From Ophelia neglecta (Eukaryota), in contig OZ260661.1 of the NCBI GenBank assembly GCA_965285935.1, positions 94,116,001-94,180,000 on the forward strand: DNA of 64,000 nt, read 5' to 3'. The notes under the pieces are model-generated. The model was not told the origin of the DNA. It saw nothing but the letters and a program-made list of their open reading frames with translations, and searched no databases. A program made the translations under genes and the position numbers. Positions 28,501 through 57,800 of the stretch are shown piece by piece. Numbering within the stretch: the first letter of the stretch is position 1; each line of letters opens with the position of its first letter.

Positions 28501-31500
28501 TAGTCTCTTCCGCAAAACAACGCAAGGAAGGGTATAGCAATATATGAAAAATTCTAAAAGTGAAAAGGGCAAACGACGGGATAAAAAGTTCTGCGAGTAG
28601 ACTGTGTTTAATTTTGACCAATACACCGGTGGGAGCCATGTCCGTGACTTGCGTCGCTTCTCTCAGGGTTCTCAGAATACCGGTGTCCTCGCCACCAGGC
28701 CTGACGACACTGACATTCACGACAGGGGATTACCGTGTTACAGCCCAGTTTTGATCCTACCCTTAGGCTACTGACAACATAAATGTTTGGCTGGGCATGG
28801 CTGACAACAATGGGCTCATCTTGTCATAGTTTGATCTCGCCAAGAGACGGCGAGCCTTACAGCGTGTCAAGTATAGCGTCCTGTTGGAGCACTTCCGGTT
28901 GGCGTTAGCGCCTGCTGTAGGACCTCATTAGGCGGGACTAACGAATGCCGAGTAAAGATAAAAACAAGAGAAGCGGCCAGTGCAGCAACGAGAACTATGT
29001 GTGTATAAATACAAATATATATATACAACATTTTAATATCTTTATATATATCTGTCTTGTCTAAAACTGATTTGGGCTGAGCTTTTTACATGATATTGTA
29101 ACGTTACTATTACGTACATAGTTTCTCCTGGAATACATGTATCCGTTTAATTTCCGCCTTTCCGCCTTTGCCTATCCCTACACTGCCATCTTTGGCAAGT
29201 GTTGGTTTGTAGTAATTAGACTTCTACCAGATATATGGAATCCGATAGGCTTATGATAGAGCTTTTCATCGTTTAGATGTGCTTATCTGTCTTTACTTTT
29301 ATAGTATTAAGCTATACCACTGAACATCCCTCCTACACAGAACCGATGGATCGGCCAAGACTCAACAACATGTTTGTTCATGTATACTTCTCCCAGACCA
29401 ATAAGTATAGATGGTGTATAAATAGGAACCGTGCATCATTACTAACTATTAAAACTGTTTTGATGCATTTCCTTTTTTGAGTGCTCCTGTCGATAGGTAC
29501 GTGCAACGCTGGTTTTATACACTTTAAAGTCTACCGATGGTAGATTTTGGGATACTCCTTGTTTCAGCCTTCTTTTTCAAAAGAAGAATTAAAAGACAAT
29601 CCTGATGGTCAAAAGATATATGCTTCAGAATCCAGATTGGGACTGTTATCTGATATGTGCAAATATTGGTAAAATGTCAAATGTTCATTGCTGTCTTCAA
29701 AAAAATGTGCCAGGTTAATTCTACATGAGGTACAGTTTAATAAATAAATTCATTGTTACAGGGACTGCTTGAAAAAAGGGATCATTCTTTGAGAGGGTTT
29801 CACACAGTAGCCCAAGACTATGTTCAAGAGTGGTAGGCCTATTGTTTGAAAAAACAATGAATCAACGTAGATCTATATGACACTTGTCCAAACGTTGCAC
29901 CAATCTGCAACCAACAATGTTCAAAGTCATCTTTTTTTGCAAAGATGTGTATTTTAAAGCAAGAGCGTGTTCGCATAGGCTGATAATATTGTTGGTCTTA
30001 CCATGACTAACCTTCGAGCTGACTTCGAGCTTTAGATGAGCGTTTTCACTCTCGGCTTTTAGCAGCCCAGTAAGGTGCGCTCTAATTTTGGCGTGCAAAG
30101 TCAAAGGCCATCAGAAGAGGTAAATTCAGGGCGGTTTACAACCATATCTAAACGTCGATACTTACCAATATGAACGGGTTGTTTGTAAAGCTACCAGTGC
30201 ATTTAGTAAACTTGGACTGACTTCCTGTCGTCGCGCAAAGCAGACTTACCAAGTTCGGCACGGCTTCGGTCATTTTAGATTCTGCTAGCTGTGAGACGAT
30301 GTGAAAATAGCCCTCAGCCTTATGGCGCGTTAAGCCAAAGTAGGTTACCTTAATTTAGTTAAGCTTGAATCGTCCCAAAGCTGTTATTGTGCGTGTAAAC
30401 AACTTTCATATTCCAGCCTTTTGAACAGAGCCTATGCTAGGAGGTATAGGACGATCCCCCCCCCCCCCTCCACTGTTCAGAGAGGTTGAAGCGGATGCCA
30501 TTGACCTAATACCTTATACCCATCACATATGCATTAAAAAAACACATTTTGCAGCTGTGAAGTGTGACGATCAGTTAGTATTGATTTATATCAGGCTCGT
30601 CTGCTCCGAGGTAAAGTTTATTTACCATTTACCACCTATAACATACAGACTCAGTCCTCAGTGAAGTGCCTCATTTCCTGTTTTGTTTCGTATTGCGTAA
30701 ATTCCTCCTTACAGACTTCATTCGGACAGCTACTTCCATTTGGGCGGAACACCTCACTTGACTTCCCGCGAAACATGTCGGTTAATTAAAATAACAAGAC
30801 AGGTTTGAAATGGCTTAGATGGATGGATTGAGAGGTTTCCCCATAATTGATACACTCCATTGAAAACAAAATTAACGATAACGAGTCCGACAAAAAAACT
30901 AGCTCGAGTACTAAACTACTTCGATACTCGTTTCCAAATGGCAGACGTTAGTTGTGCATATCAGATTCAAATTGATTCGGGATGTAACTTTTTATATTAA
31001 ACTTCTCCCTTTTAATTTTGTATCATAAATCAAATGATCGTCCAATAGCCTTTTGCTTTATTGGCTTAACTTAACAATGACAGGAATATGACCCGAATTT
31101 CTATTGGGTGAATGCTTAAAAATTCGATGACGTTTGCCCTACAAAGGCCGACCATGTGACCACCTGTGAAATCGAGGGGCGCTTTCTGGTGCTTCACCTG
31201 CCTGGGCCATGGTTAAACATATCCACCCGAACACGACATGGTCGCGACCCGCAGGTTCGACCAAAGGAACCTGGTCCCGAGGTTGGTCGCAACCGACCAA
31301 TCTGTGACGTCATTTGATACAAAATAGGGGATACAAACCGGGGATACAAACAGCAAATAACAAAATAATAAAACTCAGCATATATATGCATCTACTAGGC
31401 CTAATCTAGAAAAGCTACCAGAAATTAACGAAATGCTTTAATTGAACTTGCCATGAATTATCAAGATGATCTTTTTAGCAACACAGCAAATTGAATGAAT

Positions 31501-33818
31501 CATCACAGTCGGTTCGTTTTTGATCAACCAATATAGCAATTTTGCGTGTTCGGGTGGTGGAAGGGTACGCATGCGCGTTGAGGTGACCATAGTCAGGACC
31601 AAAGTTACATTTAGAAGTGCCCTAGCACGTCACACATATGGAACGCTCTCAGGTTGTTTTGGCATCTTTTTGCACTTCTAATATGGGCGCAATCGTGTTC
31701 GGTAATTCGAGTTCGAATAAGGCTTCTGCTTACATTTTATAAATCCTACTTTAATACGATAGTTTTACAACTTGTGCGACTGCCCATGAAGCGGCATGTA
31801 TAGAAAGTGACCAAGTTATCGTCGGGAGTAAGCACCAGTTGACCTATAGCGGAATGGCCATATAGTGCTGAAGTATTTGTATATTGAGCTCGAGAAAAAG
31901 CAAGGTCTCTGAGATAAATGTGGAGGAGTTTCCATGGATATATCATTGAAAAATAATCCTGCATTTGAGGTCCGTGCTGAGTGGCTTGGTAATTATGTTT
32001 GTAGATCTATTCATGGTGATCAGTTTTTTTGTCTCCCGATGCCTGTCTTTAAGGAACTACGTACTCCGTCATCAGTGATGGCGCGTCACTGTAGAATGTA
32101 GTACAAACGTCATCGACCGCTCAGCCAATCACGCGGTAGATAACCCGGGCAACTTAGCTGTTCCCACCAGTCCAATACCAACAGAAACAGTGACATCAGC
32201 ATTTTGATTAAGGAAACTGGCCTAAAAATTTACCTCTATAAAATGTTGGAAGCTGGTATAATATCATAGATATAAATGTACGCCATACACACGTGCAGTA
32301 TAGTGGAATTTCATGTCCATAGGCCCAAAGTGTGGCACTGAAAGTTCAAGGCACATTGACATATATATTTTCAGCTTCACACAATAATATTAGAACGCCT
32401 TATTTAACATAATATATTTGATATATCTATTCATAGTTAAGTGGAAATCACATTAAACAGAAGTCCCATCTGAACAGCTGAAGACTAGATGGGTGTTAAC
32501 TTACAAGTGTACTAGAGATATAAAACTAACATAGACCTAAGCCTTGATTTAGGCGCCTAAATTATAAAATAGTAGAAACTGGTTTAACATTGTCAATATG
32601 ATAACAAATACAGATATTACACGTTTATGGACAGTATTAAACGTATTCAAGAAAAGGTAATGCCAAAAATCGATATACGCTGGAAAAGTAGTTGTGGAAA
32701 TAATAGACATGTAATCATGGTTCTGTGTGTGTAGCCTTTGTAGCATGTCCCACCTTGTAACCAGGCCAAAACGTGCCGGATTTTGGCACCCTGTATCCTG
32801 ATTAATCCCTGCTTAATAATGATAAAAAACTACACCTTTGACATTTCCGTGACTGGCACTATTTCTGTGTTTGATCTAGGTGCGTGGTCCCCCGACGTCG
32901 GCCGTTTGGTTCTGCACACAGAGGAAAGCCATCTCCTGGCGGTATGAGGGGATTGCGTGCAGGACGGTGTGTGGGGGGTCGGGGTAGGATCAGGGTTGGG
33001 GTTGAGGTGGGGAGTCGGGAATTGTAGTTCAGGACGCAAGCAGAGTGAGAGGGTGGTCTTCATACCTATAGAGAAAGACTGAGGTGACATTTTCAGCACC
33101 GCAGGCGAATTAAACCTTCTGTATTTTGCTTAATTTGCATCAGTTAAACATACATTTAAAGGCCTAGCCCTTATGATGATCTAACCGATGATACTATGTA
33201 TCTGTATTTTGTGTGTATATATATTGGCTGAAGTATGTACTGGGACATATTTCAAGAAAATCAAATAATAGAGAATGAATAATGAGGGGGGGGGGGGGGA
33301 GAGAAGCTGGTGCCAGAAAGTAAAAAGAAATGTTTTCCTTTTTAAAGGACAGTTTGATCAAGTATATGTTGAACCTTCTTTTTACTATACGCGCGTAGAA
33401 TGCCAAACGGATTATTTTCGTACGGGTTAATGCACGTGTTCATAATGGAGGAGATTATTTGACAAAGTCGTAAGACCAATTTTTCTATTTAAACTATTAG
33501 AATTCATTTGAAATTATTTAAAATATTGATGCTCAAAGTTGGAAAGGTCGAAATATGGCATTTAAGTCTGTCTCCATACCGGCGTTTAGGATGGAAAGGA
33601 AAAAAAACAGGAAACTACTCACAAATTGTGCTGATATGTGTGACATAAATTGTTTCTCTGGAAAGTGAAATACATTTCAAGTCAGGTTCAAGTGTGTTAA
33701 GTAAAAATGAGTGTACAGTTTTGAGTATAGTTATTTAGTCGCCGAGTTCTTTGAGGAGTTGACGAGAACCTTTTTTAATTAATGCACCGAATACTCAATT
33801 GTTTTTGTGATATGTACG

Positions 33819-33858
33819 TACACACACATATATACATATATACATATATATATATATA
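33819..33858. repeat. (CA)n/(TA)n/(CATATA)n microsatellite
   Basis: Directly visible. Confidence 0.85.
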
Positions 33859-36800
33859 CCTCATGGAACATAGGCCACTGAACTATAGCACTTAGGCTTT
33901 TAGCCTTAACTATGTAGCAGACGGCGAACAAAAGTGACAAAAATAATGCAACTGAAATAAGTGCGAGTATAGCTGTCCTGTTTTATTTCTTCTTAACATT
34001 CTAGACAGATATATACCTCATTTCACTCACTTCAACAGTTACTCTTTGCCAAACCTGTCGAATGCTGCATCTTTAAAACAGTTCCTACATCCGACGATTC
34101 TCCCTTTTAATGCTTATTTTGTCTACTAATGAACTTTCAAATTTATTTTGGTGGTGTTAGGTCACTTGTGCGATAGCTGATTTGGAAGTCATCTTAAACT
34201 CCTTGAGAGTTGAGGCAAGAAATACTTAAAACTATAAATACGAGCCGCCTAAGTCTTATTTACTAAAGTTTGAGGAGGAAACATTCACAGATTATACCAC
34301 GTGGTGTCCATTAGAAGTAAAGAGGAAACATGCAGGGTCGGCCCTGAATTAGCGGGCTTGCATTCATTACTGTATTGGCCAATTTCTGGGAATGAGTCAG
34401 ATAGAGCCATAAAAATCCCGAAGCTTTCAACTGCTCTTTGGGGAAATATTAAGCGTTTAAATTATTGCGCGCTTACCATTAGAAATATACATTTTTATTG
34501 CACAGTAAACGTTGTATTGTATAGAGTACACGCGCACGCCTTGTTAATGCTGGAAAGTGTTATCGAAGGAGAAGCAACATTGAATATGCAGACTTGCGAG
34601 GTGTAATATTTTACACAATCGATCGAAATAAACGGACTGCGGCTAAAATTCAGAGCTCGTCTCTTCATATTACTGCACCATTACAGTAACTAAATACGTC
34701 GTTATTGCTCTTGACTTTGAGACAAACACACCCAGGGAATCTTCTATGATTAAACCAAAACTTTCTGGAAGACAGTTTCCACGTCACAACTAGCCTATTA
34801 CTTTTAGTTGTTTTCTCTCAGACAACGAATGTAGTTGTTTCAAGGCCGCCCACAGTAAATGGTACATGAACGAAGCATTAAGAATCGGGTATAAGGCACC
34901 AATAAACAACACATACTTACCTCTTTCTATTCCCGATTATATCTAAATAAATTAGAATGTTTTAAGCGAGCGGCAGGTCTGTTAAGGAGTCATATCCTTG
35001 TATTATATATACATACATGTATAGCCTATGGAAATACACTTACAACCACGGAATGCCTGCTTCAGAAGTATAAGACATCAAAAGATGTTAAAGAAATGAA
35101 GCATATTCAAGTTTCTAGTTTCAGCATAACGAGCTATTCTAGTTAACAACGATACTATTGTCAATTGTTTGTATGGTTATTTCGGTATCTTTAATTTTGC
35201 TTCGTGTTTCATTAATTAAAAATCACGATAACTGTTCTGTTAAAAGCTGCCAGTTTCGCCCCGTTGAATTCAAACTATTTTGGCACCAGCTTTACACACA
35301 CACAAGTTATAATATCTCCTTATCTTGACTTTCGTGATGACATGCTGACTCAATTTAAGTCATTTGTCTGTGTCTCTCTCCAACATAATACATATATATG
35401 TGTGTAACCTTGAAATGAACGGCGCCAAAACTCGCCGAGGTAAAAAAAAATAACAATTATGTATCTCCTGACAAGGCCGAGAGAGATTGTATTACTATAT
35501 GAAGAGAGATATAAACACATCAATTACTGCTTAACTTTAAAATTAATGTTCTTTCTGCGGGATGCTCCAATTTTGAAATCATTCATATTCTTTGCTTTGA
35601 GTTATAACTATATATTTTTGGGCCTTCTTTATGTATAAATATATAAAGATTAAACCGTGCTTGTCAGACATACCTTGAATGCTCTTTGTTGTAATTTAAA
35701 CGTGCCCATTCCTCGTGAAATCGCTTGATCTTTGGTGAGGAATTATTACAATTTTGATCACTTAAATGAAGACAGTGGATACCATGTAGATAGGAGCAAA
35801 AGCGGGCTGGTACCGTTCAAAGTCGTTGTTTGGAAACTTTAAAAAATGCTATAACAGGCTGATACTGAGCAGGACGGAACTTTAAAAGGAGGACCCTATA
35901 TCAGCAGCCTCGACTGGCGTTCACAAAATAATATTATTTTTTAATCAGATGCAGAATAGCTAATAGAAAAGAGCTGGTCAAGTTTAAATGGAGACTGCTC
36001 ACCAGACGATCACTGTGAGCTACGAGGCCAGTCTCGCAGATGGCTAGTCAGACACCTTACTAACAACTCCCTATTTATATTTGATATACGGTCACCCGCC
36101 ATCTTCAATATAGACAAATTATATTTTCAATTCATCACAAAATGGCTGTGAATTCACGATACAAGATATATGAGTAGCATTAAAATTAATCAGAGCGGTG
36201 GTTTTCCTAGTAATCCACCACCTGTGTGGCACTAGAGAAGCTGTACCCGCCAACCGGTCATGTTTTGGCCCCTGCTATTTATTGGTGATTATAGTTTCAT
36301 GAGCTTTACTCTGGCGTATTATTACAGGGTATTAAGCATATGTTAGACCTCGATGATAACTTTGTGAATTGGCGCACACGCAATTCGGTTTCCGCTAGCG
36401 TGTAGAGCTTCCTTTGTGCTTTATTAGTCTCTGAAAGGTATTAATGGTTGAAGTACTCCCCAATAATTACACACTGTCCCGCACACACCGTTGTTCTCTA
36501 AAACAAGACTATAGACATTAGGAAAGCCGAACATCACCGCATTATCGCTATTTCTCGGTTGATCACGGGGACACACGATCCACGATCAAATATATTACTT
36601 CCGATGCATTATTACGACATCATAATTGCCCTGTTCAGGAAATGTTTTTCATTTTTACAATTCCTGCATATTTCTGTGGTAAGAATCACTAATTTTCTAC
36701 AGACCATTTATTGGATACGCTACAAAAATAGTTAGAGCCTCACGACATGATTGTACAGGACTACAGTGTTCCTGTTGACTAAAAACCGGCAGGATACGTT

Positions 36801-38562
36801 TATTTATTTAAAGTTAAGTTAAATTTGCAAACATTGTATACAGGTATTAAAATATTACTGTGGCGGTTGCACTTTGCCGTGTCGAACTATAGAGGAGTGT
36901 TCCTTGCACACTTTATTTGCTTCTTTTTAACCTCATCAAAAAACCTGCCATGGTAGGCATAACTATAGGTCTAAATATATATGTTCTAAGTAACGCATTT
37001 TTAGGAGATATAATATTATTGAACATGAACATTTTTGTGATGTATTTAATTATCCATGCAAATCAAAGGGTCTTCTTCCTTTTTGCCCACAACAGAAAAA
37101 TGGACTTTGTAGCAGAACTACTTTTCTGGGTGCAAACTAGCTCTATTCATGGTAAAAATTAATAAATTAAAATCAATGTACGAAAAAGGGCTTTGTAAAA
37201 TCATAAAAATAAAAAGACAAAATGACTTTGGGTAAGATATATTAATTCAACTCTTTCAGATATTCAGAGTTGAAAGAGCTGAAAGAGTTAATCATTAGGC
37301 TAATAAAATTATAATGCCTGCTCTGTTATGTTGTGTTATATTAAATTGTTTCATTGAACTATTCCCCTTTGACTTAACGTACTGGATATGTATTAAAATG
37401 TGTTTCATTAAATGCATTGGAGTAAAAATAAAATCTGAAAAAAACTTTTCAAGCAAATGAAACAGGTTTCAGCAAGAGACAGCATCACGGAACCACTTTC
37501 AGCGTATCCACACAGGCCTACTCCATCGTGTTAGTCAGACAAACTGTCTGACTGATTATCAGCTTAAGTTGGAAACGGCCTAAAGCGGTCCATCGATATA
37601 CCTATACTCGCAAAACATAATTATGCTTATTTAGTTAATAACTGACTTTTCGTCTAGGCCTAATATATGACCTTCGGTATATGCCTGTTGTCTTAAATGT
37701 GTACAATCATCAATAATAATTATCGTTAATAATGGGCCTAGTAGACGTGTTAAATAATAAAGGCAAAAACGTGCAAAAGACATTTTTTTACATTCAAACT
37801 CTAAAATATTAGCCAATGCTATATCGTATGAAAGAAAACAGCGGACATGAATTGGAAGCCGAACAGAAAAACACACCCAATGACAGCAATGTTCGAACTT
37901 TTGGCGGGGGCGACCAGGCGCATTAAAGATGAAATACGCTTCAGAATAGGGCGATAGGGACGTGATAAAAGATGAACTGTCCCGAAATCAGGAGGCCCGA
38001 AATTTACGGTCCCCGTATCGACGGGTTATGAGAGCCAGGGCGTAGGGGAGGCCAGTTACGACCAAAAGCTTCTTTTTTTCTTCTCTCGGAATTTAACCCA
38101 CGAGCGGTGGCAAGGCGGCGAGGATGATGAATATTCTCCAGAGTATAACTCGTGCATTGTCACACAAAATATTGTCTGTTTCAAAGCAGTAGGCAGACGT
38201 GAGCCGGTTTCGGCTAGTCGACAGAGGATTTATACCTTGAAAATCACGATAACGTGCCTGAGAGCCGTGTCCTAACTCCCGCAATATCGCAGCGACAAAA
38301 GGCGGGGTTACCAGGTTCAACCCAATCCCTGTCGCAGTGCAATGTGCTCCGAAAAACACAAACATAAAGAAAAGGCAAAAGATACGTCCCTAAACTATCC
38401 TCATTACATTTACCTATAAGTTAATCAGAATGAAATGTCCGCAAAAAAATAGATAGGCCTAAAGAAAACGCAAACATTTCAGTCCTGCAAATATAGAACG
38501 TGTGACTGAAGGCCTATAGGCCTAAATATAGGCCTAAGTCTATAACCTTGGTCCATATATCT

Positions 38563-38745
38563 AAAGGTAAAGGTAATTAAAGGTAGATTTATAGGTCTTT
38601 TTCCAGTCTAGACCTGCTCACACCACATTACCTCGTGCATATGGTTTGTAAGTTGTTCGCCTTGGCAACAGCGCAATGACCCGGCCACGAAGAGACCCCG
38701 GGACCTTTCGACCCGACCGGAGAACGATCTCCATAACCCCTTAAT
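38563..38745 (-). mobile_element. Degenerate, internally deleted tRNA-derived SINE
   Basis: An (AAAGGT)n-like tail at 38563-38584 reads (ACCTTT)n on the minus strand. A reversed tRNA-like head (CAATGACCCGGCC...CCCGGGACCTTTCGA...TAACC) resembles SINE heads. A and B boxes are decayed. Confidence 0.5.
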
Positions 38746-39993
38746 ATCCCAGAGTTTGATAAACCTAGACATTTTAATACTGGTAGGCTAAATTGTGACT
38801 GTCGGTAGGTCTGCTTATCCTACATATATCTATACCGCCAGCGTAAATGTCTTACCAAGAATTCGCTGGGTCGGCGTGTTTTATTTTTAAGACAAATTGT
38901 ATTTTCAAGGGTGCTATTACCAATTGCGACCAATCTAAAAGTTGGACTAATATATCAATAGGCAGGCCTATATTTTTGTTCATTGTTCGCTTTCATTGAT
39001 GAAACCGACCATGTGTCATCCTGTAACCGTCATCCTGTGATATATTCACGCAAAGGTATTCTGATTGTTTTAAACAAAGTGCCCGAACTATTCCATTGTC
39101 AAAGTGTTACATTTTTGTTATTATCTAAGTATTGCAGTAAACAGAGTAACACATTTCGACAAATTGTCCTTAATTTTCAGGTCTCCCCAATTTTTTTGCA
39201 ACAACATGCATATAGCCCTTGCAACTGTTACTTATCACTAATGGTCTCCCATGCCGGGGTGAGACCTCGGCCCATATATATTTGTTCGCCTGGTACCTCC
39301 ACCCTCGCGTTCGCCAGGTATCTCTTTTCTTGCCAATTTTAAACCTCCGCCCCTCCCAGCAGCCAGATATCTCTTCTATACCAGCGCTATTAACCCGTCC
39401 CCTCCAGCCCGCCCGCTGTTTATTCGCCCCCTCCACCCCGAAGTGATCTATCAATGTCTGCTATATTGACCAGCCAAACAACAGATAAACCTTCTCCGGT
39501 TCTCCACAGAAACCCGATCGACTTTATCCCTTTGTTGTGATGCCAGTATAATTGTGCGATGCGGCAGTACAAATTTACCTTACTCCGTGAAGGGGGGTCG
39601 AGTTACCTGAGCCGTGGCGCCGTCGAGACTTGACGCTTCCCGGGCTGGGGGGATACTTGGCTACCGCCGAGAAGAGGAGGCCTCGAGCACCAACAAAAAA
39701 CAAACCCTTTTTAAGGTGTTTGCAGTAAGTGTACAGCGATAAAGGCCTAGGCTTGTGTGACATGTGAAAAAAATCATCATGTAGCCCAATTCCAAAACGT
39801 GCGTCCAGCCATGCACAATTCGATTATTATGAAAAAGTTTTAGCTATAAGGATATACTGGGCTGCTATTAGGCTTATAGTAAAATATTGGAAAGTATTAA
39901 CTCGTGATATTGGTATACATGTATAGATGGCGCTTTGACAAATATATTTCAGCTTAATTTACACTATAGTTGGTCCTATAAATAAATTAATAA

Positions 39994-40045
39994 ATATATA
40001 TATAGAGAGACAGAAAGACAGACAGACAGAGACAGAAAGAGAGAG
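39994..40045. repeat. Compound (TA)n(GA)n(GACA)n microsatellite
   Basis: Directly visible. Confidence 0.85.
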
Positions 40046-47639: not shown

Positions 47640-48200
47640 AGAGACTAGAAAGTTTGGAAAATTGTCAGAATATGTTACTCTGTTTACTACAATCCCTAAA
47701 TACTAACAAAATGTAAAACTGACAATGGGTTAGTTCTGGCACTTTGTTTCAATCAGTCATAATGCCAAAGCCATCCTTTGTATGACTAGATCTCAAAATA
47801 ATATATGGTTGACATCATTAATGAAAAGGAACAATGAAGGATTACCTACATATGTTGATACACTTTACTCCAAACTTTCAATTTGGTGGCAATTAGCAAG
47901 ACCTGCCTGAAGGCACAGTGTATAGACTATTGCCACTATTGCATATTGCGAGAGACCTGAAAGTTTGGAAAATTTTCAGAATATGTTACTCTGTCGTCTG
48001 CAGTCTTTAGATAATGGCAAAATGAAACACTTTGGCAATGGACTATTTAGGCACTTTGTCACAAACCCAAAGCCATCCTTTGTATGAATGTATCACAAAA
48101 TAACACATGGTCCGCATTTGCAATGACAGAAAAACATTAAAGAATAACATTCAATTTGATACATTAAGCTTACTCCAAACTTTCAGGTTATTTGCAATTG
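47640..48200. repeat. Diverged tandem duplication (two ~240-260 bp units, period ~311 bp), each bounded by inverted repeats
   Basis: Shared collinear blocks GAAAGTTTGGAAAATT.TCAGAATATGTTACTCTGT, GGCACTTTGT, CCAAAGCCATCCTTTGTATGA and TTACTCCAAACTTTCA. Confidence 0.85.
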
Positions 48201-48284
48201 ACAATAAAATCGGTCAGTAAGATGTTTGAAAGCTACAGGTTTTTACTGATACTTTTGCACGGTACAAATATCTTGGGAGAGTAG

Positions 48285-48460
48285 TACAGTGAAAACTGTA
48301 AATTAAGATCAACCATGTGAATGGAAGATACTGGTCGGATTATGGAGGAGGTCTGTGTGTACAGGTGATTTATAATAGAAAGTATAAAATGTGGTCTTTT
48401 TATATGTGGTGTGAATTGACAGTTGGTCTGTATATATAGATGGTCTTTAAGGCGATTTAA
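48285..48460. mobile_element. Decayed Tc1/mariner(pogo)-type MITE
   Basis: Starts TA-CAGTGAAAACTGT and carries repeated GGTC(T)..TAT..AG modules typical of such MITEs. The right TIR is eroded. Confidence 0.4.
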
Positions 48461-51400
48461 AAGCCATTTTTTGTAAAAGTTCTTGTTTTCATTCACAGAT
48501 TAATAAGTACATGAATGTTCGTCCTTTTTTGTGTGTAGGTCTTATCTCGGCACTCTCTACCACTACCGTTGCTTTATTGCTTCGGGAGTATCTCTCCATC
48601 GGGAAAGATGTTTGGAAAACGACAATGTTGCAGGCCTTGGGTGTAGGCCTACGTTCAATTTATAATATGTTCAATGTCTTCTCCATTTGTAGATGTAACA
48701 TGTTATAAATAGAGGCGAAGCCTATAGGCCAATACTGGCTGCTTGTCTAATTTTAAGCATGTGCACGAAAAAAAACACACGAATGCATGCCATGCAAAAA
48801 CTGAAGGTAACTTGGCAAATAAAAGACCCCGATAGGCTACACAACCTTGAATATTCCAATCGCTGTATAGCAAACATCTATAGGTTATAGACTTACATTA
48901 GGGTTTAGAGTTTCTGAGCGTAGGCCACGTTTACAAGATACTATATATGGCTATGAAGCGCCATCCAAACGACATGGCACGTGGTTGTGACGTGTACAGG
49001 CCTATACTTGTAGGCCTACTAGAACTTGTACACACGGAGGCTCTTATCTCGTGCATAACGGGTGTAATTTCTTTCCCAGCGCCCTTGAACATCATTTGAG
49101 ATGTGTTACGGAGGAAAGTGAACAGATTAACGGGACTATATATGTCGATCAAGTTTGTGGACATTATATCCCGCCCCTCATCTACATTATTATAAAAGCA
49201 AGCTTAGAGTGCCAGAGAATACTGTTCTCATTTTAGTGTGAACTTACTTTAATAAGCCAACTATTTGTATCTTAAGTGAAATAAGACAATGGGTTTTGGG
49301 GTCTGGGGATTATTTCGAAGCGAGTTTATTAAATTAGTTAAAAACTAATTAAGGTTTCTTTATTCCTATGCTATGTACTCTACAGAATGCACTAATAAGT
49401 TTGATAAAAGGGCCATCCACATGTCAGGAGCACAGAATGAGAGGAGGCTCAATCAATTAAATTCTCAAGCAGACGTTGATCTGCCCAATAGAATCTTATT
49501 TGAACATCATTATCTCTTGGGAACTTGCGGCAGAGGGTATGAAAGCGGGGCGGTCCAAATGGTAAATAGGCCTATTGGAGTCTGCTATATATTGAATGAA
49601 CTGGCTTTTTTTAATCGTTGACTGGACCAGGTTATATCTGTAGTTAATTTCAGTCACAAAATAAGACATATGAACAATGTTAAAGGTTAACTATAGGATG
49701 TTTATTTCTTTTACTGTCTGCCATATACAAAATACGCCTGTGTGCATATATAGGCAAACGACTGGGCTTAAGGGTATCAGCCTATACCGGCCTAGGGGCA
49801 TAGGCCTAAATGCATGCTGTAGCATGCAAATCATTTTTAAAAATCAAGATTCAATTTGTAAATTTCCGGTATGGATCGCATTTATATCTCCTAAATGTTT
49901 CTCATTGAGGCTTGGGACGTATATATTGTACGCCTATATACCTTAATATGTACGTTTGGGAGGAAATCTTAATTGGAAAATATAACCCGTATATAGCACT
50001 GTAGGGGCAAAAGAGTTGCACTCCTGCCAAATGTGTCTGGCACCCCTTCATCCTTGGTTGTGTTCAGTGAAATGCCCCCTTCCCCGTCCCCACTCTTAGA
50101 TAGGTTTACCTGCAGCATCCATCGACCGACCCGTCACATGTTCAAATAGCTCTTACATACCTCCATCCTGCTCGGATATATACGGGTGTACAATCCGAGG
50201 GATTTGTTGGCGCCTTGTCCCCTCCTCAGTCGAGATTACCCGCCTTACCTGGGCTTACCTACTTCCTGTCTGAGATAGCTTTAACACCCGCTGACAAATA
50301 CCGCAACTGCATGCTCGCTTCAATAACACAAATCCCTTCAAATATATCACAACAAACCCCCTTTTTTAGCATTGTGCCCGTACCGCTTTTTTCCAGCGCT
50401 AATCCACGTTGCAGTGTCGTCTGCCGAGGTGCTATTCCATGTGGCGCCTGCCTGCTCATCTTCTCATTAAGTTACTGACGGTTACCTGGCGCTACCTGTA
50501 ATCTGTAATCATCTGATTGCGTTGTCCGGCTTTAATTACACTGGAGGGCTGTATAGTGCTGGCGAGCGGATTCCGCCGTCTTATGTAGGCATTCTTAAAA
50601 CAGTTAATAGTACCACGTCGGGAGAGCAGGCCTAGCTGAATAATGCGACCAAATAGATCTATACCAGTCATTGGTTTGCACCAATACAGCTGACAGGTGC
50701 AGACGACATTTGAACAGTTTTCGCCATTATCCCGCCATTTCTTTGCCATATTCCGTTTAGAATAAGGAAAGCAGCTCATCTCAGCCGAAAGAAAATTGTA
50801 TCATCTCGCATCATTTGACGTAACTATGCTTTCCCATCCAACGGTTGATTATTCTGGTAAAGGTCAGGGTACGGATTGGAGCAAATGATGAGAAATTTTA
50901 CGCCATAAATATGCCCTACTGTAAAATTGTGGCAAAAGAAAGAGAATGGGGAAAGGACTGTGACTAAAGGGAATTACATGCTCAAAGATGAATATTGAAC
51001 TTTTTTATCATTCAACCATGTTCAAGGAACTCATTCCGATCTGGTTCGTTTCAATGATCTTTCTATCGTTTTACAATGTTACTAGCAAATATATTTGACT
51101 TTGATATTCAAACACAACTAGGCACAGGGGAATATTTCAAATCCCAGTTTGGCCTTACAAGCTAATACCGAATGTCAGGCCCTTGTTGAAATGAACCATT
51201 GAGTCTGAATATCCGATTATCAAAAGGCGCATTTCATACTTATATTGCATTTCTTAAAGTGTAAACTATATCGTTGTAGAACAAGACTGGTTGACGATGA
51301 AGTATGGGACTGACTGCCCCATGCTCGTATAGGGCATGTTGAAAGGGACAGCAATTCAATAGAGATGGCTGATTTGGATATACTAGCCTTTCAAAGAATT

Positions 51401-54222
51401 TACTGCATAAAATCGAAAATTGTGCTTTCAAACATAATTCGCTATCATGACTACTTCGTTATATTGTATATAAATGATTCGCCATTAATGTCAATTTCTT
51501 TCGTATCTATAGTTCGTTTCCATCAAACGAGAGATGATTAATTTCTTAATTGGCCAGTTGCCCGGAACGTAATTAAAGGTCCAACACAGCGATGATAAAA
51601 GAATCTAAATCACTGTGTAGAACTCGACCTTTATTAGTGTGACAAGTTCCAATATTATTTATTTGGTCCGTTCTTTGGTTGTTTTCGCCAGTCATCTTCC
51701 TTTCCCTCATTTATAAATCATAACATGTAATGCGCTGAAGCTGATTATTTGGTCTGCGTGGATTTCTAAGGTTAGTGAACAGCCCGAGATGATTTTACTA
51801 TAATCAATACGCGGCCCCTTCAAGACAGTAATAATGCGTATTGGACAAATACATAGAAATCCTTTTGAGCTGTCACAGGAGCAGAGCCGAGGACCGAGCC
51901 TTCCATTTTGATTAAATTGCCGTCTAGAACGCAGCCTGTTCCATGATCCATCAGTCAAAATGGCTGGCTTTAATTTTTCGGACAGATTTTGTCAGGTGAC
52001 CCGCCCACCGCCGATCTGATTGGCTGGCACGGCCTTACAGGTGAAAAAGGCCACGGACCCAAGATCTTTTCATGAATACATAATCAGAAATCAGCGATTG
52101 AAAAGATCCCGTCACATCGCGGCATGTTTGCGTTCATGCACCGCCCTCTACCAGAGAAGACGACATTAATCTTCTAAAAGCACAGAGACCCTATATGTTC
52201 CCACCCATATTTATCTCCAGACGCTCAATTGGTTACTAAATACATATAGTCACCGACCCTATTGTGATATATAGGCCATATATGGTGTTTCCATATCAAA
52301 TCCAATGTAGGCCTTGATAGGCCTACTATGACTATATAATTATATATATATGGTCATATATCTGAACCGAGTTGCACTAATTTATTCTTCTTAGGGGATT
52401 CATAGATATTACATATATGTGTCGTATATTACTTGTCAAAACTTGTCAAATCCATCATTGGATGCTGCCTTCGCAAGACAAGTTTCGAGGAAATAATTAT
52501 TCTGTATGAAGATTTGGTTCTGACAGCCAACAGGTTATAGATATTTAGCCGTGTAAGATAAATGTGCAGATAGCGTCCCTCTTTTTAAATGGCGTGGTTG
52601 GATTCTCGCTAGCGAGGGGATCCATGTTCCTGTGCAATATTTTTTCAAACGCCAAACGTACACTTTTTGCCATGCTTTGTTTGTCCACGGTTGTGCAATT
52701 TATTTCGTATCGCTATTAGGCTTATGTGTAATGCAAAAAAAAAAAATCTGACAAGTATGGTCTCAAGTATGTACCTACATAGCTAACCCCTTTTGTGAGA
52801 GCCAACTTATTTTTTAATGTTTTTTTCAAAATCTTCCGACAACTGACTGAAAATATCAGTGAAATACCCAGGGTGTGTACGGAGTTGTAAGACAGGTAAA
52901 TACTTGCTTTGCTAATTCCAGTATTCGTCTCGGCATTAAGTGGCCAGCTTTTATAACAGTTTGTCACCAACTGCAAGGTGAGTTACAAAAGTCGGCGGGT
53001 TTGATATGATTTTCTTTTTCTCCCGGCCTATGGTACGAGTACACCCGAGGTCAAGGCTTCATGTCCTGCTTTCTTTACAACTGTCTTGCAGCAGGAAGGT
53101 GGGATGGCTTCCTTCCCTGGTGTTGAATAGGCTTCTATCCTGGTAAAATGCACAGGAAATCGGTGGCCAGTGCCGGCGCTGACAGGCTGGAGATGACAAG
53201 CTTTGTCCTGGCAAGTGTCCGGCGTCCCTTTTCAGACTTCTCATGCAGCAGCCCTATTGTTAGGGCTCACTCGGGCTGGCATACGACCATCAATGACAGG
53301 CCCACTCTAACTGCCATACAAACAGACAAAGCATTGATTTCCATGTATGCATATACAAACATACATCTCAACCCTAAAAATGGTCACAGCGCCTTGTATG
53401 GTCACCACCACTCATTTTACTCTTAGCTGGAGATGTCGGAGAAACTTTCCGGCTTTCTTTGTTGTTAGTGACTAGCATGAGCCTGAAAATATGAACATTT
53501 GAATATTATTACATTATTTCTCTAAGGCATCGTATGTATTAATACTGCCTTTATTTATGGTGAGCACAATCCTAAAAAGTCCCTTGCTCTGAATGTTCGC
53601 TTCAAAAGTATGAGGATCTTTCAATATATGCCTGTATTCATTGCTCAAGACCTTGTATTCAGACAGATCGATCGGTTGACGAATCTCCGGAAATGCGCCA
53701 GGAACATTTATTACTTAGATACAATGATCAATATGTTCCATGTATAACAATATTTTAAATTGACCGCCAACCTCACCCCATACCTCAAAGATATCGACTT
53801 CAGATAGGGAAATTGTGATTTATAGTGATCTATTAATTGGGTGTAGTAATTGCAGCCTATAACAATTAATATAACTAATGGGTTTACGCAAAAAAAATCA
53901 ACCCCATATAGGCCAACCGCGATATAATTTAAATCAAGTAAACAGATAATAATGTATGTGTTTTCGCAGTTAAAATAGTGTGAAAGATGTTCTGTCTCTC
54001 AGGCCACACTTTTATACAGACCCGTGAGAAAGCAAGATTCCTTCATCATGGCAAAGCATTGTAAACCAATACAAGAGCTTCTCGATTAAGATGGGACTTT
54101 TTAATAGAGGATGATGGGAGGCCTAACTGATAAAACTGTGTCGTAGAAAATAAAAGCTTAAACGGGAACACCTTTTTCTGACCAAGTCCTGCAAGTAAAG
54201 GCCTATAGGCCTATATGCGAGT

Positions 54223-54896
54223 TAGACAAGGTACGCGTGTCCGATTCATAATTTACTGACTTATCGGTAATATTTGTTGTGTTTTTGCCCTAGAGACATG
54301 GAAGAAAATATCTGCATTGCGCTTTGGAAACCAAACTTTGCCACCTACCGAAAATTAAGGCGTTATTTCTACGGCGCTATCTTATATATATATTTATATA
54401 TGTGCACAAATAAACAATCGATTCGTCTTAGTCGATTCAGTTTTTAAACATTCAGATCTTTATACAATTAGAGATGTTTGACCGAATTTAAAAGGCTGTC
54501 ACCGTTTAAATATTGCAGGTCTGGCCAGTGGGCTCTCTAAACGGCGGAGGTGATTGCGCAGCCGTTTGTATCTAGTGGCGGTTTTATGAAAGTGCATGCG
54601 GCCGCACAGACAGGTCCGACGTATAGTCCGTACCGGCGATATTCGCTACTTGTAGGTGCAAATTGATAACTGAATAGACCACGATGAATCGTTCGTTTAT
54701 TTGTTTATGCAGTCCTTTACATCTGCCAAGTATGTAGCGACGTCGAAGTAGCTCCTTTTTCGGTAAGTGGCAAAAGTTCGGCTTTTGAAGCGCAATGCAG
54801 ATAATTCGTCCCATATCTCTGTGGTCCAAAACAAAACACACATTACCGATATATTAGTTAACGGTAATAATGGCCCAGAGACATGTACCTTGTCTA
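54223..54896. mobile_element. Fold-back element, 674 bp, with ~220-bp imperfect terminal inverted repeats
   Basis: Termini TAGACAAGGTAC...GTACCTTGTCTA. Arms 54223-~54445 and ~54665-54896 align in reverse complement (e.g. TATCTGCATTGCGCTT / AAGCGCAATGCAGATA; TTTGCCACCTACCGAAAA / TTTTCGGTAAGTGGCAAA). Confidence 0.85.
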
Positions 54897-57800
54897 TATA
54901 CAAGTTTACCTAACAAACACAAAACCCAGCTAAAACAGTGCCGTGGCCATGTCTTGGTCTAGCATTAAGCACGCAGGCATTCGAGGTGACAAGGAAAGCG
55001 TCTTCCATGCTCCATCTGCACGGCTTTCCAGGGGTGTTTAGCGTCTTACCGACTGTACTATTATCCTGGAAGCTTAATAATTCGTCTAGCCTACATTTAC
55101 ACTCCCGTTGGCCCTGCGGCATACCCCACTGTCAAACTATTAAATCAACGTTTAACTGATCAGGAGATGCATGCCCTCTCGACTGTCAACGAAAATGATG
55201 ACAATTCTTGCCCACGCGCCATTCGGGTTGAGTATAAGGTAAATTGATCTGCCTTTTCGTTTATTCTCCAACCCTTTCCGATGCATTCAGGTTTCACTAG
55301 TCTATGTCAAAGAAGAAATTATACAAAAGAGCAACATGGTTGATATGCCATTATTTAGAAGACAACCAGGCGAAGTGTAGCCATGCTCATGGCTCGATTC
55401 TAGAGCCCGCTGTTCGCAACCACGTGTGCGCGAGTGCAGGCTATTTAGCACGGCTCCAAAGCCCGAGACCCAGGTGTACCCTTTGTCCCTAGGGCACACA
55501 GGTCGGCCTGACGGGCACAGCACGCCCAACCATCGCTAATCCCCGCAAAATTGCCGCAATTTGCCTCACGCGACTGCCCAAGTCGGCCTGGTCGGGCGGG
55601 AAAAATGAGCTCGGGTGGAACTTACCGAACAACGTACGTGATGCAAACAAGACAAACAACTGAAATGATTGTGTAACGCTTGATGTAGAAAGTCCAGGCA
55701 GCGGTTTGCCAACATTCTGAAATGAAGTGAAATAAGGTTAAAACAACGCCTTGTACTGTAGGCCTACAGCCAAAGCATCTTTATCAATCAATTGAAATAT
55801 ATTGTATTCTGAAGATTACACATTAGAAAAGAAGCATACAAATATCAGATGTGATATGTTCCCAAAGATAAACAGCAAAAAAAGAGTGAACATTTCTTAA
55901 GTTGTCAAGGACTTTTGCAGCAGCATGTACGAAAAAGCTATGCTCCCAATTAATTAAATGTTGCCAGCAAGTTCTAGGCCTAGGAGCGATTGAGAGAATA
56001 GATAGTCCCTAGTGGCTGAAATCAGTACCCTTATTAACGGTAGCTTCTTGCGACATGTGATAAAAGCCCTACTACGCCAATTACAAGGCATATAACGGCA
56101 GATTAATATGGCCAGCGTATACAAATATCCGGCTATCCCCTGTGATCCCTCACCTCACACCGTGGTCGCCACTGCTGTCAGATGACACGCGATTTTCCCC
56201 CCACAAGAGCGGCGTCCCTCCTGGGTGACCTACCAAGGTCATCCTCCCAGATTACAGCGTAATCATATTAACATAAACCGCTGATGAGACCCAATTAAAA
56301 GCCAATTAATATTCCCGTTCAGGTGTTATTCTCTGATATTCCTATGGCCGGCAGTAAATTAACAACAACGTCCATATGATGCTGCCACCAGACCACCACC
56401 AGCCATTACCGCGTCCCTCCTGCAGCCCGCAGAAGACGCCATCGAGTGTTCAGCCTGCTTCGGGCCAACCGGTCGACTCTCGACCCCCATTCCTCGCTGC
56501 AACACGCCTGATTTAAACCACTCTCGCCCCTTCTTGATGGAATTCACTTTGACAAATGTCGGATAAAATTGTGAAGATGGCGGCAATAGTTTTTCAGCAA
56601 TTATTACGAGTTAGCCAACGGGCTCGGGTAAGAAACTCGGGTTGGTTGTGTTGAAGCCCCAGGCTACACACTTTACTGCCGACTAAGTAATTAATTAGGC
56701 ACTGGCGTTAAGAAATCACGCTATTAAGGAGGCATTGTTTCAGGAAATAATAAACTTAGTTTGATACCTTCCTGTGCCAAACGAACGGGCGGTGGGAAGC
56801 ACGGGCGGAAGGCGGCAATTCTGCGGCCACCTGGCGAGACGCAGGTGTAATAACAATGTATATGGAGGCTGGCCCGAACAGTATAGGCATATACCGACTT
56901 ATCTACAAGCTCCTACACTGTAAAGAATATCCAAGCAGACGGTAAAATAACTGGGTAGGCCGAAATCCGCACAACGACATATTTCGTTGAACTTGTCAGA
57001 CTAAAGCTAAAACAAACTATTACTAAAGGATTGGGGGGGGGGGGGTATATTAAGCCTATATGTCAAATTCCGATAAGCCTTGTTTTTAAATTTTCTGAAC
57101 TTATTAAAAGGAGATTTATGTTAGAGCGAACTGACTGAACAGCCTATAGGCCTATGCGAAAAAAAAGGTTTAAGAAACGTACAAACGTTATAGATCTTAC
57201 GGGTGATGGATTCCTTCGGGATAATATTAACATCTCAGCCTGTTTTCTTCTAGAGTTCCGGGTAGACACATTTCAGATATTTACATTAAGGCCTATACCT
57301 TTCGCGATGAACCATTGAAATGAATACATATAGCAGAACTCGTTATGTGTCCATGTCACATTTATTCATCACGGATTCGATATCCCCAATAAATGTACCT
57401 TAGAGGTGTCATTCAGATCATGCACTTGATGGCATGTGGGCGATATCTAGCCCGAACTGCTCTTTGTTGGTTGAAATATTCTGCAGATGGCAGCACAATA
57501 TGGGTAGTTAACAGTGTTGAGGCAATCCATATTAAGCTTGTCCCGGACAACATGTGAAGGTTAGGCAATGCTATGATATCTCTGCAGATGCAATACCGGT
57601 GCATCGCACATAAAGTGTACTTTAATATAGAAGAAAAAATATTGGTAGGGCTTATTGTACCTTTCTATAATTTTTAATCAGTGTCTGTCATCGAAGTATA
57701 TAAGATGAGGTACTCGGTATGTTTACCACAGTGACTGTATTATACATGATCGCGTTTGTACTTCTATACAGCTTTGCCTTACCCTTAACTAAGCAACCTT

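What the first reader, a model, noticed from the sequence alone, without database searches (positions are those of the whole stretch)
29834..57154. TAGGCCTA is strongly over-represented only outside the CpG-depleted domain and looks like a TA>TA-GGCC-TA insertion footprint
Seen: at least 21 perfect copies (29834, 31396, 37655, 38454, 38517, 38529, 40987, 42050, 43086, 45577, 45745, 45807, 48644, 49011, 49567, 49801, 52318, 54206, 55759, 55975, 57147) plus many AGGCCTA variants and tandem forms (GGCCTATAGGCCTA). About 0.5 are expected, and I found none in 1-25 kb. Flanks are unrelated and mostly AT-rich. The motif has no CpG, so deamination cannot explain the partition. The copy at 45577 sits inside a MITE internal repeat: AAAATG-TAGGCCTA-CCCCTTTT versus the sibling repeat AAAAAG-TA-CCCCTTTT (~45624-45639), implying a 6-bp gain at a TA. 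Inference: excision scars of a very active TA-targeting DNA transposon with GG...CC ends, or an unknown site-specific insertion process, that avoids methylated or transcribed chromatin. That would make the motif a fossil chromatin map.
Basis: partly seen in the sequence, partly recalled or inferred. Interest (0 to 1): 0.75.

Follow-up and report, generated by a model that had tools for sequence, protein, structure and literature searches.

The report
Six-base transposon scars at TA sites
The eight-letter palindrome TAGGCCTA litters this annelid genome because six letters were repeatedly added at TA sites, most likely as scars left by a jumping gene, and the scars are about three times rarer in DNA that looks methylated.

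Summary
There are 21 exact TAGGCCTA (0.8 expected), all at 29,834-57,154. None lies in the CpG-depleted 1-26 kb.

The genome holds 69,501 sites, about 7 times the base-composition expectation.

The 6-bp gain at TA is real. 12 of 12 paralogs of the 45179 MITE read TA where the window reads TAGGCCTA. A second, unrelated repeat (L017/L006) shows the same gain.

Among TA-Gn-Cm-TA and XX-GGCC-XX forms, only TA-GGCC-TA is strongly enriched.

I found a candidate donor. It is a young, roughly 3-kb, roughly 60-copy non-autonomous family with GGG...CCC ends and a 2-bp TA duplication. Its link to the scars is circumstantial.

The "chromatin map" claim holds only as a tendency. In 180 kb of random non-satellite DNA there were 4 sites in 70 kb of CpG-poor pieces against 19 in 110 kb (p=0.024). 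That is about 3-fold, not exclusion. The window's sharp contrast is this bias plus 26-57 kb being a hot region.

The scan found this before on other DNA of this genome: three follow-ups reached the same scar reading without a donor.

The parts
1..26000 (.). CpG-depleted domain (CpG o/e 0.29-0.51) with no TAGGCCTA. By earlier scan notes it is the 3' part of a Meis gene body; I did not verify that.
26001..64000 (.). CpG-normal domain (o/e 0.64-1.03) holding all 21 sites. That is 21 of 2,992 TA dinucleotides (0.70%), against 0 of 1,856 in 1-26 kb.
29834..29841 (.). TAGGCCTA scar
31396..31403 (.). TAGGCCTA scar
37655..37662 (.). TAGGCCTA scar
38454..38461 (.). TAGGCCTA scar
38509..38536 (.). Cluster: AAGGCCTA directly followed by TAGGCCTA (38517), then AATA, then TAGGCCTA (38529).
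40987..40994 (.). TAGGCCTA scar
42050..42057 (.). TAGGCCTA scar, with a 7/8 copy at 42067
43086..43093 (.). TAGGCCTA scar, followed 6 nt later by TAGGGCCTA
45179..45702 (+). High-copy MITE (C-rich inverted ends) that hosts the scar at 45577. Contig depth is 6,000-44,000, against 11-34 beside it.
45577..45584 (.). TAGGCCTA scar private to this MITE copy. 12 of 12 paralogs read TA here. 30-36 contigs per run join ...GAAAATG directly to TACCCC.
45745..45752 (.). TAGGCCTA scar
45807..45814 (.). TAGGCCTA scar in single-copy DNA
48644..48651 (.). TAGGCCTA scar in single-copy DNA
48997..49018 (.). CAGGCCTA (48997) and TAGGCCTA (49011), 14 nt apart
49567..49574 (.). TAGGCCTA scar in single-copy DNA
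49801..49808 (.). TAGGCCTA scar, with degenerate copies just upstream
52308..52325 (.). TAGGCCTT (52308) and TAGGCCTA (52318)
54198..54213 (.). AAGGCCTA directly followed by TAGGCCTA (54206)
55759..55766 (.). TAGGCCTA scar
55975..55982 (.). TAGGCCTA scar
57147..57154 (.). TAGGCCTA scar, preceded by CAGCCTA

Best explanation
Each TAGGCCTA is a pre-existing TA dinucleotide that gained six bases (GGCCTA). The most likely mechanism has four steps.

1. A cut-and-paste DNA transposon that duplicates TA on insertion, and whose ends read 5'-GG...CC-3', inserted at the TA.
2. It was later cut out with staggered breaks that left the outermost bases of each end on the flanks.
3. End joining kept both stubs. 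The site closed as TA-GG+CC-TA.
4. Repeated insertion and excision over a long time wrote about 70,000 such scars.

The scars favour A/G-TA-C/T targets. They cluster locally. They are about 3-fold rarer per TA in CpG-depleted (presumably germline-methylated, gene-body) DNA and absent from the sampled satellites.

What is shown: the 6-bp gain at TA, its uniformity, its genome-wide excess, the partial CpG bias, and the existence of a young family with a TA duplication and GGG...CCC ends.

What is inferred: that excision made the scars, the size of the stagger, that this family or its relatives are the donor, and that methylation or chromatin causes the bias.
For: Excess.
- 21 sites against 0.8 expected in the window.
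- 69,501 sites in the genome, against about 10,000 from base composition.
- 44 against 3.2 (order-1 expectation) in 244 kb of window plus random non-satellite DNA.

Indel origin.
- 12 of 12 MITE paralogs read TA where the window has TAGGCCTA.
- Contigs of other MITE copies join across the site without the 6 bases.
- In L017, 3 paralogous units read GTATA-TG where L017 reads GTATAGGCCTATG. A second, decayed 6-nt gain (ATAGGCCTGG) lies 20 nt further on.

Specificity.
- Of 16 XX-GGCC-XX forms, only TA is clearly enriched (44 vs 3.2).
- Of the TA-Gn-Cm-TA forms, n=m=2 dominates. TAGGGCCTA is 5 vs 0.7. TAGGTA and TACCTA are not enriched.

Second hits.
- TAGGCCTAGGCCTA occurs 642 times and TAGGCCTATAGGCCTA 190 times; reversed controls give 0.
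- That is about 0.5% per TA at or beside an existing scar, against 0.11% for the average TA.

Target context.
- -2 is T in 22/39, -1 is a purine in 29/39, +1 is a pyrimidine in 28/39.
- ATAGGCCTAT accounts for 11 of 44 and TTAGGCCTAA for 0 of 44.

Candidate donor.
- The 25-nt end GGGTAG(A/T)GATGGGTAATTTTGCTCA has 58+61 matches at up to 2 mismatches.
- 11 of 13 copies have an exact 2-bp direct repeat: 10 TA and 1 TG/TG.
- None of the 13 has a direct repeat once TA is counted as part of the end. One copy also fits a 6-bp repeat.
- One copy has TAGGCCTA and TAGGGCC directly beside its end.

CpG bias.
- 0 of 1,856 TAs against 21 of 2,992 in the window (Fisher 1.3e-4).
- In random DNA, 4 sites in 70 kb against 19 in 110 kb (binomial 0.024).

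Published background.
- Canonical Sleeping Beauty scars are TA plus cag/ctg plus TA (PMC5224488, passages seen).
- Excision leaves 3' overhangs derived from the inverted repeats (PMC4423477, passages seen).
Against: - No filled-versus-scar allele pair was seen. No 6-bp polymorphism was listed at the six unique sites laid (one individual, contigs only, some rows not shown).
- No autonomous element or transposase was tied to the candidate family.
- The family has only about 60 copies.
- Only 2 of about 119 ends have a scar within 30 nt, against 0.4-0.7 expected. That is not significant.
- 99 TAGGCC half-sites in 264 kb share no common extension. No abundant element with GGCC ends exists now.
- Natural excision scars are usually heterogeneous. 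In rice only 8 of 94 were 'perfect' (PMC4423477). The uniformity here needs a special repair outcome.
- GG stubs are not complementary to each other, so why both are kept so regularly is unexplained.
- Only 1 scar was found in the 2-3 TAs probed across the roughly 900+ copy MITE family.
- A genome-wide CpG-neighbourhood count was inconclusive for the methylation bias.
Confidence: 0.65

Rival explanations
1. A TA-specific DNA break that has nothing to do with a transposon is repaired with a fixed filler. One version: each 3' end that finishes in TA is extended by GG, as telomerase would do in the TTAGGG register, and the two ends are then joined to give TAGG+CCTA.
For: The gain is at TA, symmetric and constant. 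No abundant donor element exists. TAGG and CCTA are parts of the telomere unit and its complement. That the annelid telomere unit is TTAGGG is recalled, not tested.
Against: Telomerase priming should add GGG or more, yet TAGGGCCCTA is 0 vs 0.2 expected and TAGGGCCTA only 5, against 44 for GG+CC. No nuclease that cuts at R-TA-Y with TA-bearing overhangs on both ends is known to me. A family with a TA duplication and GG...CC ends does exist.
Confidence: 0.12
2. TAGGCCTA is a palindromic binding site for a dimeric protein (insulator-type or promoter-type, in the way the TATCGATA element works in flies), kept or created by selection in unmethylated regulatory DNA.
For: It is a perfect 8-bp palindrome. 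It is enriched in CpG-normal intergenic DNA next to a developmental gene. It forms homotypic clusters: 6 of 21 sites have a 7/8 copy within 25 nt.
Against: Both informative cases arose by a 6-bp insertion, one inside a MITE and one inside another repeat. Overlapping TAGGCCTAGGCCTA occurs 642 times, which is odd for a binding site. One site per 1.3-1.8 kb over 27 kb is very dense. One-mismatch variants look like neutral decay, with transitions most enriched. No paper with this motif as a site turned up.
Confidence: 0.05
3. The excess is carried passively by repeats (MITEs, satellites, young transposons) whose consensus contains the motif.
For: A 40-bp satellite at C1:639-664 kb has the motif in most units. 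A young repeat with at least 7 near-identical copies has it internally. The roughly 3-kb family has an internal copy.
Against: Flanks of the 39 sites first sampled are unrelated, except the L011 pair. Window 48,550-57,250, with 10 sites, has one old repeat, and it spans none of them. Sites 45807-49801 lie at single-copy depth. 0 of the 23 sites in random DNA lay in a satellite. The MITE consensus lacks the motif.
Confidence: 0.05
4. Slippage or microsatellite-like expansion of a GGCCTA unit from a few seed sites, together with substitutions, produces the motif.
For: Period-6 dimers number 642. The TA...TA direct repeat could mediate slippage.
Against: Slippage cannot create the first copy at a plain TA. 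Period-8 dimers (190) occur at a similar per-TA rate, which slippage of a 6-bp unit does not predict. Most sites are single.
Confidence: 0.03

Closest known systems
Tc1/mariner excision footprints (for example the Sleeping Beauty canonical TA-cag/ctg-TA scar)
   Same: TA target and TA duplication. The scar is the duplicated TA plus a few terminal transposon bases. Target preference alternates pyrimidine and purine around TA (PMC5224488 passages).
   Different: The inner bases are GG+CC rather than CA/TG-type ends. The scar is almost uniform and is the top over-represented 8-mer of a whole genome. No Tc1/mariner transposase is linked: Tc1-like DDE_3 reading frames are few, and the two long Tc1-like frames cut out had no inverted repeats within the 3.8 kb fetched.
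PHIS superfamily (PIF/Harbinger, ISL2EU)
   Same: Inverted repeats usually start with GG. ISL2EU makes a 2-bp duplication inside a palindromic A|AT|T target (PMC4482050 passages). The candidate family here sits in A-TA-T. PHIS transposases are very abundant in this genome (678 first-look candidates, 150 scored hits at E<=1e-8).
   Different: The described groups duplicate AT, TWA, ANT, CWG or TNA, or nothing, but not TA. AT-GGCC-AT is not enriched here (9 vs 6.3). No PHIS transposase was tied to the candidate family.
Highly iterated palindrome HIP1 (GCGATCGC) of cyanobacteria
   Same: An 8-bp palindrome, many-fold over-represented and dispersed through unrelated sequence (abstracts of PMC4390886 and PMC5861425 seen in the listing).
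   Different: HIP1 is bacterial and linked to DNA methyltransferases. The abstracts seen tie it to selection or function, not to insertion. Here the motif is created by a 6-bp insertion at TA in an animal genome.
Plant DNA-transposon excision scars (rice Mariner/Stowaway, Harbinger)
   Same: Scars left in the germline and fixed; they can be read by comparing copies or species (PMC4423477 passages).
   Different: In rice the scars are heterogeneous, with deletions and fillers; 8 of 94 were perfect. Here one product dominates.

Membership tests
Cut-and-paste transposon excision footprint (TA-duplicating element) | The site differs from the ancestral or paralogous state by an insertion that includes a second copy of the target (TA) | tested here: met
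   12 of 12 MITE paralogs. 3 paralogous units of the L017/L006 repeat.
Cut-and-paste transposon excision footprint (TA-duplicating element) | The bases between the two target copies match the termini of an element present in the genome | tested here: inconclusive
   A family with GGG...CCC ends and a TA duplication exists. Its link to the scars is circumstantial: 2 of about 119 ends have a scar within 30 nt against 0.4-0.7 expected.
Cut-and-paste transposon excision footprint (TA-duplicating element) | The same locus is seen both filled (element present) and scarred in different haplotypes, individuals or species | not testable with these tools
   Only contigs of one sample were on hand. No 6-bp indel or loose end was listed at the six unique sites. 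Many rows were not shown.
Cut-and-paste transposon excision footprint (TA-duplicating element) | A transposase able to mobilise the element | tested here: not met
   No open frame of 100 aa or more lies wholly inside the two L011 copies except one of 115 aa. The longest frames in the 3.96-kb copy (175 and 108 aa, overlapping) lie at 2702-3250 of L070 and read like translated C-rich MITE sequence; that reading was by eye and was not aligned. No transposase frame was seen, so the partner is unknown.
Tc1/mariner superfamily (for the candidate donor) | TA target-site duplication | tested here: met
   10 of 13 copies have TA on both sides; 1 has TG on both sides. No direct repeat remains once TA is counted as part of the end. 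One copy also fits a 6-bp repeat.
Tc1/mariner superfamily (for the candidate donor) | DD(E/D) transposase of the Tc1/mariner type inside inverted repeats | not tested
   No autonomous copy was found. DDE_3 hits were not near family copies. The two long Tc1-like frames among the four DDE_3 loci fetched lack inverted repeats.
hAT superfamily (for the candidate donor, because its ends read TAGGG) | 5-8 bp target-site duplication outside the ends | tested here: not met
   0 of 13 copies have a direct repeat of 3-9 bp beyond the TA. The TG/TG copy shows that the dinucleotide is a direct duplication.
Transcription-factor or insulator site | Sites arise and persist by substitution under selection | tested here: not met
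   2 of 2 informative sites arose by a 6-bp insertion. The one-mismatch variants fit neutral decay.
Dispersed repeat carrying the motif | Related flanks around most copies | tested here: not met
   Flanks are unrelated. The window region is unique. Depth is single-copy. A minority of sites are carried by repeats.

The most novel reading that the evidence does not exclude
A low-copy but very mobile TA-duplicating transposon lineage with GG...CC ends, possibly a PHIS-like group with an A|TA|T target that has not been described, has hopped so often in the germline that its uniform 6-bp scars became the commonest 8-letter word of an animal genome. Each hop leaves one dated mark, so the scar map would be a quantitative fossil record of where the element could land: unmethylated, non-satellite DNA with regional hot spots from local hopping. 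It would also record how end joining works in this lineage, with no loss of non-complementary 2-nt overhangs.
Probability: 0.3. Interest if true: 0.8.

Novelty: new variant of a known kind. Interest (0 to 1): 0.62.

Why it matters
Excision scars are normally rare, messy and invisible without a sister genome. Here one uniform scar occurs about 70,000 times and can be read from a single assembly.

If the reading holds, it gives three things:
- a genome-wide count of past cut-and-paste events, which copy numbers cannot give;
- a direct measure of integration bias with respect to gene-body methylation in a mosaic-methylated invertebrate;
- a natural read-out of end-joining fidelity.

It also warns motif hunters that a strongly enriched palindrome in regulatory-looking DNA need not be a binding site.

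My literature searches found no description of such a genome-wide scar in an animal. The library lacks most subscription journals, and supplements were closed, so a prior report may exist.

Tried and rejected
Donor hunts that failed.
- 99 TAGGCC half-sites in 264 kb share no extension. A recurrent 12-mer, TAGGCCTGCTCT, does not extend.
- A scan for TA-GG...CC-TA inverted ends found only the L011 family.
- I first dismissed that family as hAT-like. I reinstated it after flanks of 10 more copies were read.
- The two long Tc1-like reading frames cut out (L033, L034) have no inverted repeats and share only 74% identity over 412 nt of coding DNA. The other two DDE_3 loci (L035, L036) gave nothing that defines an element end.
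- The top PHIS family is longer than the 8.6 kb fetched, so its ends were not reached.
- A repeat that ends my anchored pattern with TAGGCCTA proved to carry the motif internally.

Searches for more indel cases.
- Patterns anchored in the MITE and in the L017 repeat found only the known sites.
- The region 48,550-57,250 has no paralogs spanning a site.
- One further candidate (38965 against 47708-47908) rests on a 66%-identical alignment. I set it aside as ambiguous.

Methylation bias at genome scale.
- Counting CpGs within 32 nt of all sites gives 55,641 + 37,136, or 1.07-1.33 per site.
- This falls between the no-bias and 3-fold-bias predictions for either assumed target context. It is also inflated on one strand by CpG-rich satellites.
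- The result is inconclusive.

Other points.
- Scars beside donor ends: 2 of about 119, not significant.
- Age: the excess of one-mismatch variants over the excess of perfect sites is 1.2. This fits either a burst about 0.15 substitutions per site ago or a long steady process, so I claim no date.
- Papers: searches gave background only. PMC6980720 held nothing on the size of the Minos scar. The 2-nt stagger of Tc1/Tc3 and the 6-bp Minos scar are recalled, not seen.
- The Meis gene identity of 1-26 kb and 'annelid' come from earlier scan notes and were not tested.

Full report
OBSERVATION

Shuffles give a mean of 0.80 and a maximum of 4. All sites lie between 29,834 and 57,154.

CpG o/e is 0.29-0.51 in every 2-kb bin of 1-26 kb and 0.64-1.03 beyond that. 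TAGGCCTA is the most over-represented non-homopolymer 8-mer of 26-64 kb. AGGCCTA occurs 0 times in the first domain and 35 times in the second.

Contigs from three runs of one sample reproduce the sequence over the single-copy sites. That sample may be the one assembled.

GENOME SCALE

The window is C1:94,116,001-94,180,000 of a 762-Mb assembly. Earlier scan notes call it an annelid with a Meis gene running into the window's start (not tested by me).

TAGGCCTA occurs 69,501 times. Base composition predicts about 10,000.

In 24 random 10-kb pieces of C1 I counted 23 sites. That matches the genome mean of one per 11 kb. None of the 23 was in a satellite, although six of the 24 pieces are tandem arrays.

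Some sites elsewhere are carried by a 40-bp satellite. Others are carried by a young repeat with at least seven near-identical copies.

Flanks of the sampled sites are unrelated. Window 48,550-57,250, which has ten sites, contains a single old repeat that spans none of them.

HOW A SITE ARISES

The window's MITE (45179-45702) belongs to a family with 922 first-look candidates. Its contig depth is hundreds of times the single-copy level.

Twelve of twelve fetched paralogs read GAAAATG-TA-CCCC where the window reads GAAAATG-TAGGCCTA-CCCC. In each run, 30-36 contigs of other copies join GAAAATG straight to TACCCC.

An independent case turned up in the random sample. L017 reads CCTTGTA-TAGGCCTA-TG, while three paralogous units in L017 and L006 read CCTTGTA-TA-TG. 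Twenty bases further on, the same L017 unit has ATAGGCCTGG where the paralogs are six bases shorter. That looks like a decayed scar.

The only other sites with paralogs are the L011 pair. Both copies carry the motif, so the pair says nothing about origin. So 2 of 2 informative sites are 6-bp gains at TA. The MITE consensus lacks the motif.

SPECIFICITY AND UNIFORMITY

In 244 kb, only TA is clearly enriched among the sixteen XX-GGCC-XX words (44 vs 3.2).

Among the TA-Gn-Cm-TA forms, n=m=2 dominates:
- TAGGGCCTA is 5 vs 0.7.
- TAGGTA is 56 vs 66 and TACCTA 58 vs 66, so neither is enriched.

One product is therefore made again and again.

One-mismatch variants exceed expectation (129 vs 79). The T-to-C transition at the outer position is the most enriched. 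This is what decaying scars would show.

SECOND HITS AND TARGET

TAGGCCTAGGCCTA, where two scars share a TA, occurs 642 times. TAGGCCTATAGGCCTA, two scars on adjacent TAs, occurs 190 times. Reversed controls give 0.

The shared-TA form corresponds to 0.46% per TA of an existing scar. The adjacent form is of the same order or higher, depending on how often a TA follows a scar. The average TA carries a scar 0.11% of the time. A TA-directed process with hot spots explains both forms. Slippage of a 6-bp unit, or a protein-binding site, does not.

The flanks favour T at -2 (22/39), a purine at -1 (29/39) and a pyrimidine at +1 (28/39). ATAGGCCTAT makes up 11 of 44 sites and TTAGGCCTAA 0 of 44.

Six of the 21 window sites have a 7/8 copy within 25 nt, where I estimated about 1.5 by chance (count; estimate by hand from the window's 7/8-match density).

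A CANDIDATE DONOR

Earlier follow-ups in this scan reported no element with GG...CC ends.

In L011 two roughly 3-kb elements have 28-nt inverted ends that start ATAGGGTAGAGATGGG. The 25-nt end occurs 58+61 times in the genome at up to two mismatches, mostly at 0-1. Matches pair up 2.7-3.96 kb apart, which gives about 60 young copies.

I read both flanks of ten further copies, the two L011 copies and one 3.96-kb copy:
- 11 of 13 have an exact 2-bp direct repeat.
- In ten of these the repeat is TA.
- One copy has TG on both sides, which shows the dinucleotide is a duplication and not part of the inverted repeat.
- Counting TA as part of the end, none of the 13 has a direct repeat of 3-9 bp, which argues against hAT. 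One copy (L068/L069) also fits a 6-bp repeat that includes the TA.

Among the ten copies read, the base outside TA is A on the left in 7 and T on the right in 8. This is the context most scars have.

One copy is followed by TATA-TAGGCCTA-TAGGGCC. Several copies sit in pairs 86 bp to 1.2 kb apart, as local hopping would give.

The elements hold no transposase frame.

A 2-nt staggered cut at TA|GGG...CCC|TA, with both stubs kept, gives TAGGCCTA. An occasional third base gives TAGGGCCTA. This step is inference. The 2-nt stagger of Tc1/Tc3 is recalled.

The link is not proven. Only 2 of about 119 ends have a scar within 30 nt, against 0.4-0.7 expected.

PHIS transposases are abundant (678 candidates, frames up to 610 aa). 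Their elements usually start with GG (PMC4482050 passages). However, the described groups do not duplicate TA, and AT-GGCC-AT is not enriched here.

THE CPG PARTITION

In the window: 0 of 1,856 TAs against 21 of 2,992 (Fisher 1.3e-4).

In 180 kb of random non-satellite DNA:
- By piece: seven CpG-poor pieces (70 kb) hold 4 sites and eleven others (110 kb) hold 19 (binomial p=0.024).
- By 2-kb bin: 0.052 per kb at o/e below 0.4, against 0.15-0.19 per kb at 0.55 or more (Fisher on TAs p=0.05).

This is a bias of about 3-fold, not exclusion. At 0.052 per kb the window's first 26 kb should hold 1.35 sites, so zero is unremarkable. The window's 26-64 kb, at 0.55 per kb, is about 3 times above the usual CpG-normal rate.

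The six satellite pieces (60 kb) hold none.

A genome-wide count of CpGs near all sites was inconclusive.

Three other first-reader notes report the same partition in other windows. They are unchecked.

That CpG depletion marks germline methylation of gene bodies is established knowledge for mosaic-methylated invertebrates. It was not measured here.

VERDICT

The motif is a 6-bp scar at TA, most likely from transposon excision. A plausible but unproven donor family is now in hand.

The scar map is biased against CpG-depleted DNA and satellites. It is not a binary chromatin map.

The phenomenon belongs to a known kind, excision footprints. Its form is unusual: it is uniform, numbers about 70,000, and is the top 8-mer. 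My searches did not find it in print.

Noticed in passing
window 45179-45702: High-copy MITE with C-rich inverted ends. Contig depth is 6,000-44,000 against 11-34 beside it. This copy is flanked by TAGCTA on both sides. 922 first-look candidates in the genome.
   Followed up: partly
window 47600-48600: A second repeated element (contig depth 170-2,500) with many rearranged joints in the contigs.
   Followed up: no
window 60000-62000: G-rich degenerate tandem repeat (GC skew 0.28) with units like GGAGGAGACGGGATCGTGG. No TAGGCCTA here although CpG o/e is about 1.
   Followed up: no
window 1-26000 and random loci: TACATGTA is the top palindromic 8-mer of the CpG-depleted domain (6 copies) and 36 vs 8.7 expected in 204 kb. 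It has the shape of a Tc1-type scar (TA-CA-TG-TA) but could equally come from CpG decay.
   Followed up: no
window 49647-49824: Two 178-nt contig versions in runs X2 and X3, one identical to the window and one with 9 differences. Probably the two haplotypes of one animal.
   Followed up: no
L005, L010, L012 (C1:91.0, 84.9, 85.3 Mb): Three of 24 random 10-kb pieces belong to one satellite with a unit of about 975 bp (97% identical between pieces). Six of the 24 pieces are tandem arrays.
   Followed up: partly
G000, many places; L044:2391-6985 and L045: PIF/Harbinger-type (DDE_Tnp_4) transposases are very abundant, with open frames up to 610 aa. Two copies of the top family are 99.6% identical over 4.6 kb, so they were active recently.
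   Followed up: partly
L045 (reverse complement) 6966-8537: A 1.57-kb insertion in one of the two 99.6%-identical copies. It is flanked by AT on both sides and has no inverted ends.
   Followed up: no
L033 and L034: Tc1-like transposase frames of 404 and 322 aa without stops and without inverted repeats in 3.8 kb. They are alike only over 412 nt of coding DNA (74%). They may be old or domesticated genes.
   Followed up: partly
L037-L043: At least seven near-identical copies of a repeat that contains TAGGCCTA internally (...GGTTA-TAGGCCTA-TAGGTCATG...). A scar may have been copied along with its host element.
   Followed up: partly
G000 C1:639,000-664,000 and C1:556,600-558,200: Satellites with 40-bp and about 36-bp units that carry TAGGCCTA in most units. 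Units without it keep the period, so there the motif decays by substitution.
   Followed up: no
L070:2702-3250: The 3.96-kb copy of the GGGTAG... family is about 1 kb longer than the usual copies. Its extra stretch holds two overlapping frames whose translation reads like C-rich MITE sequence. I took it for a nested copy of the C-rich MITE by eye; it was not aligned.
   Followed up: partly
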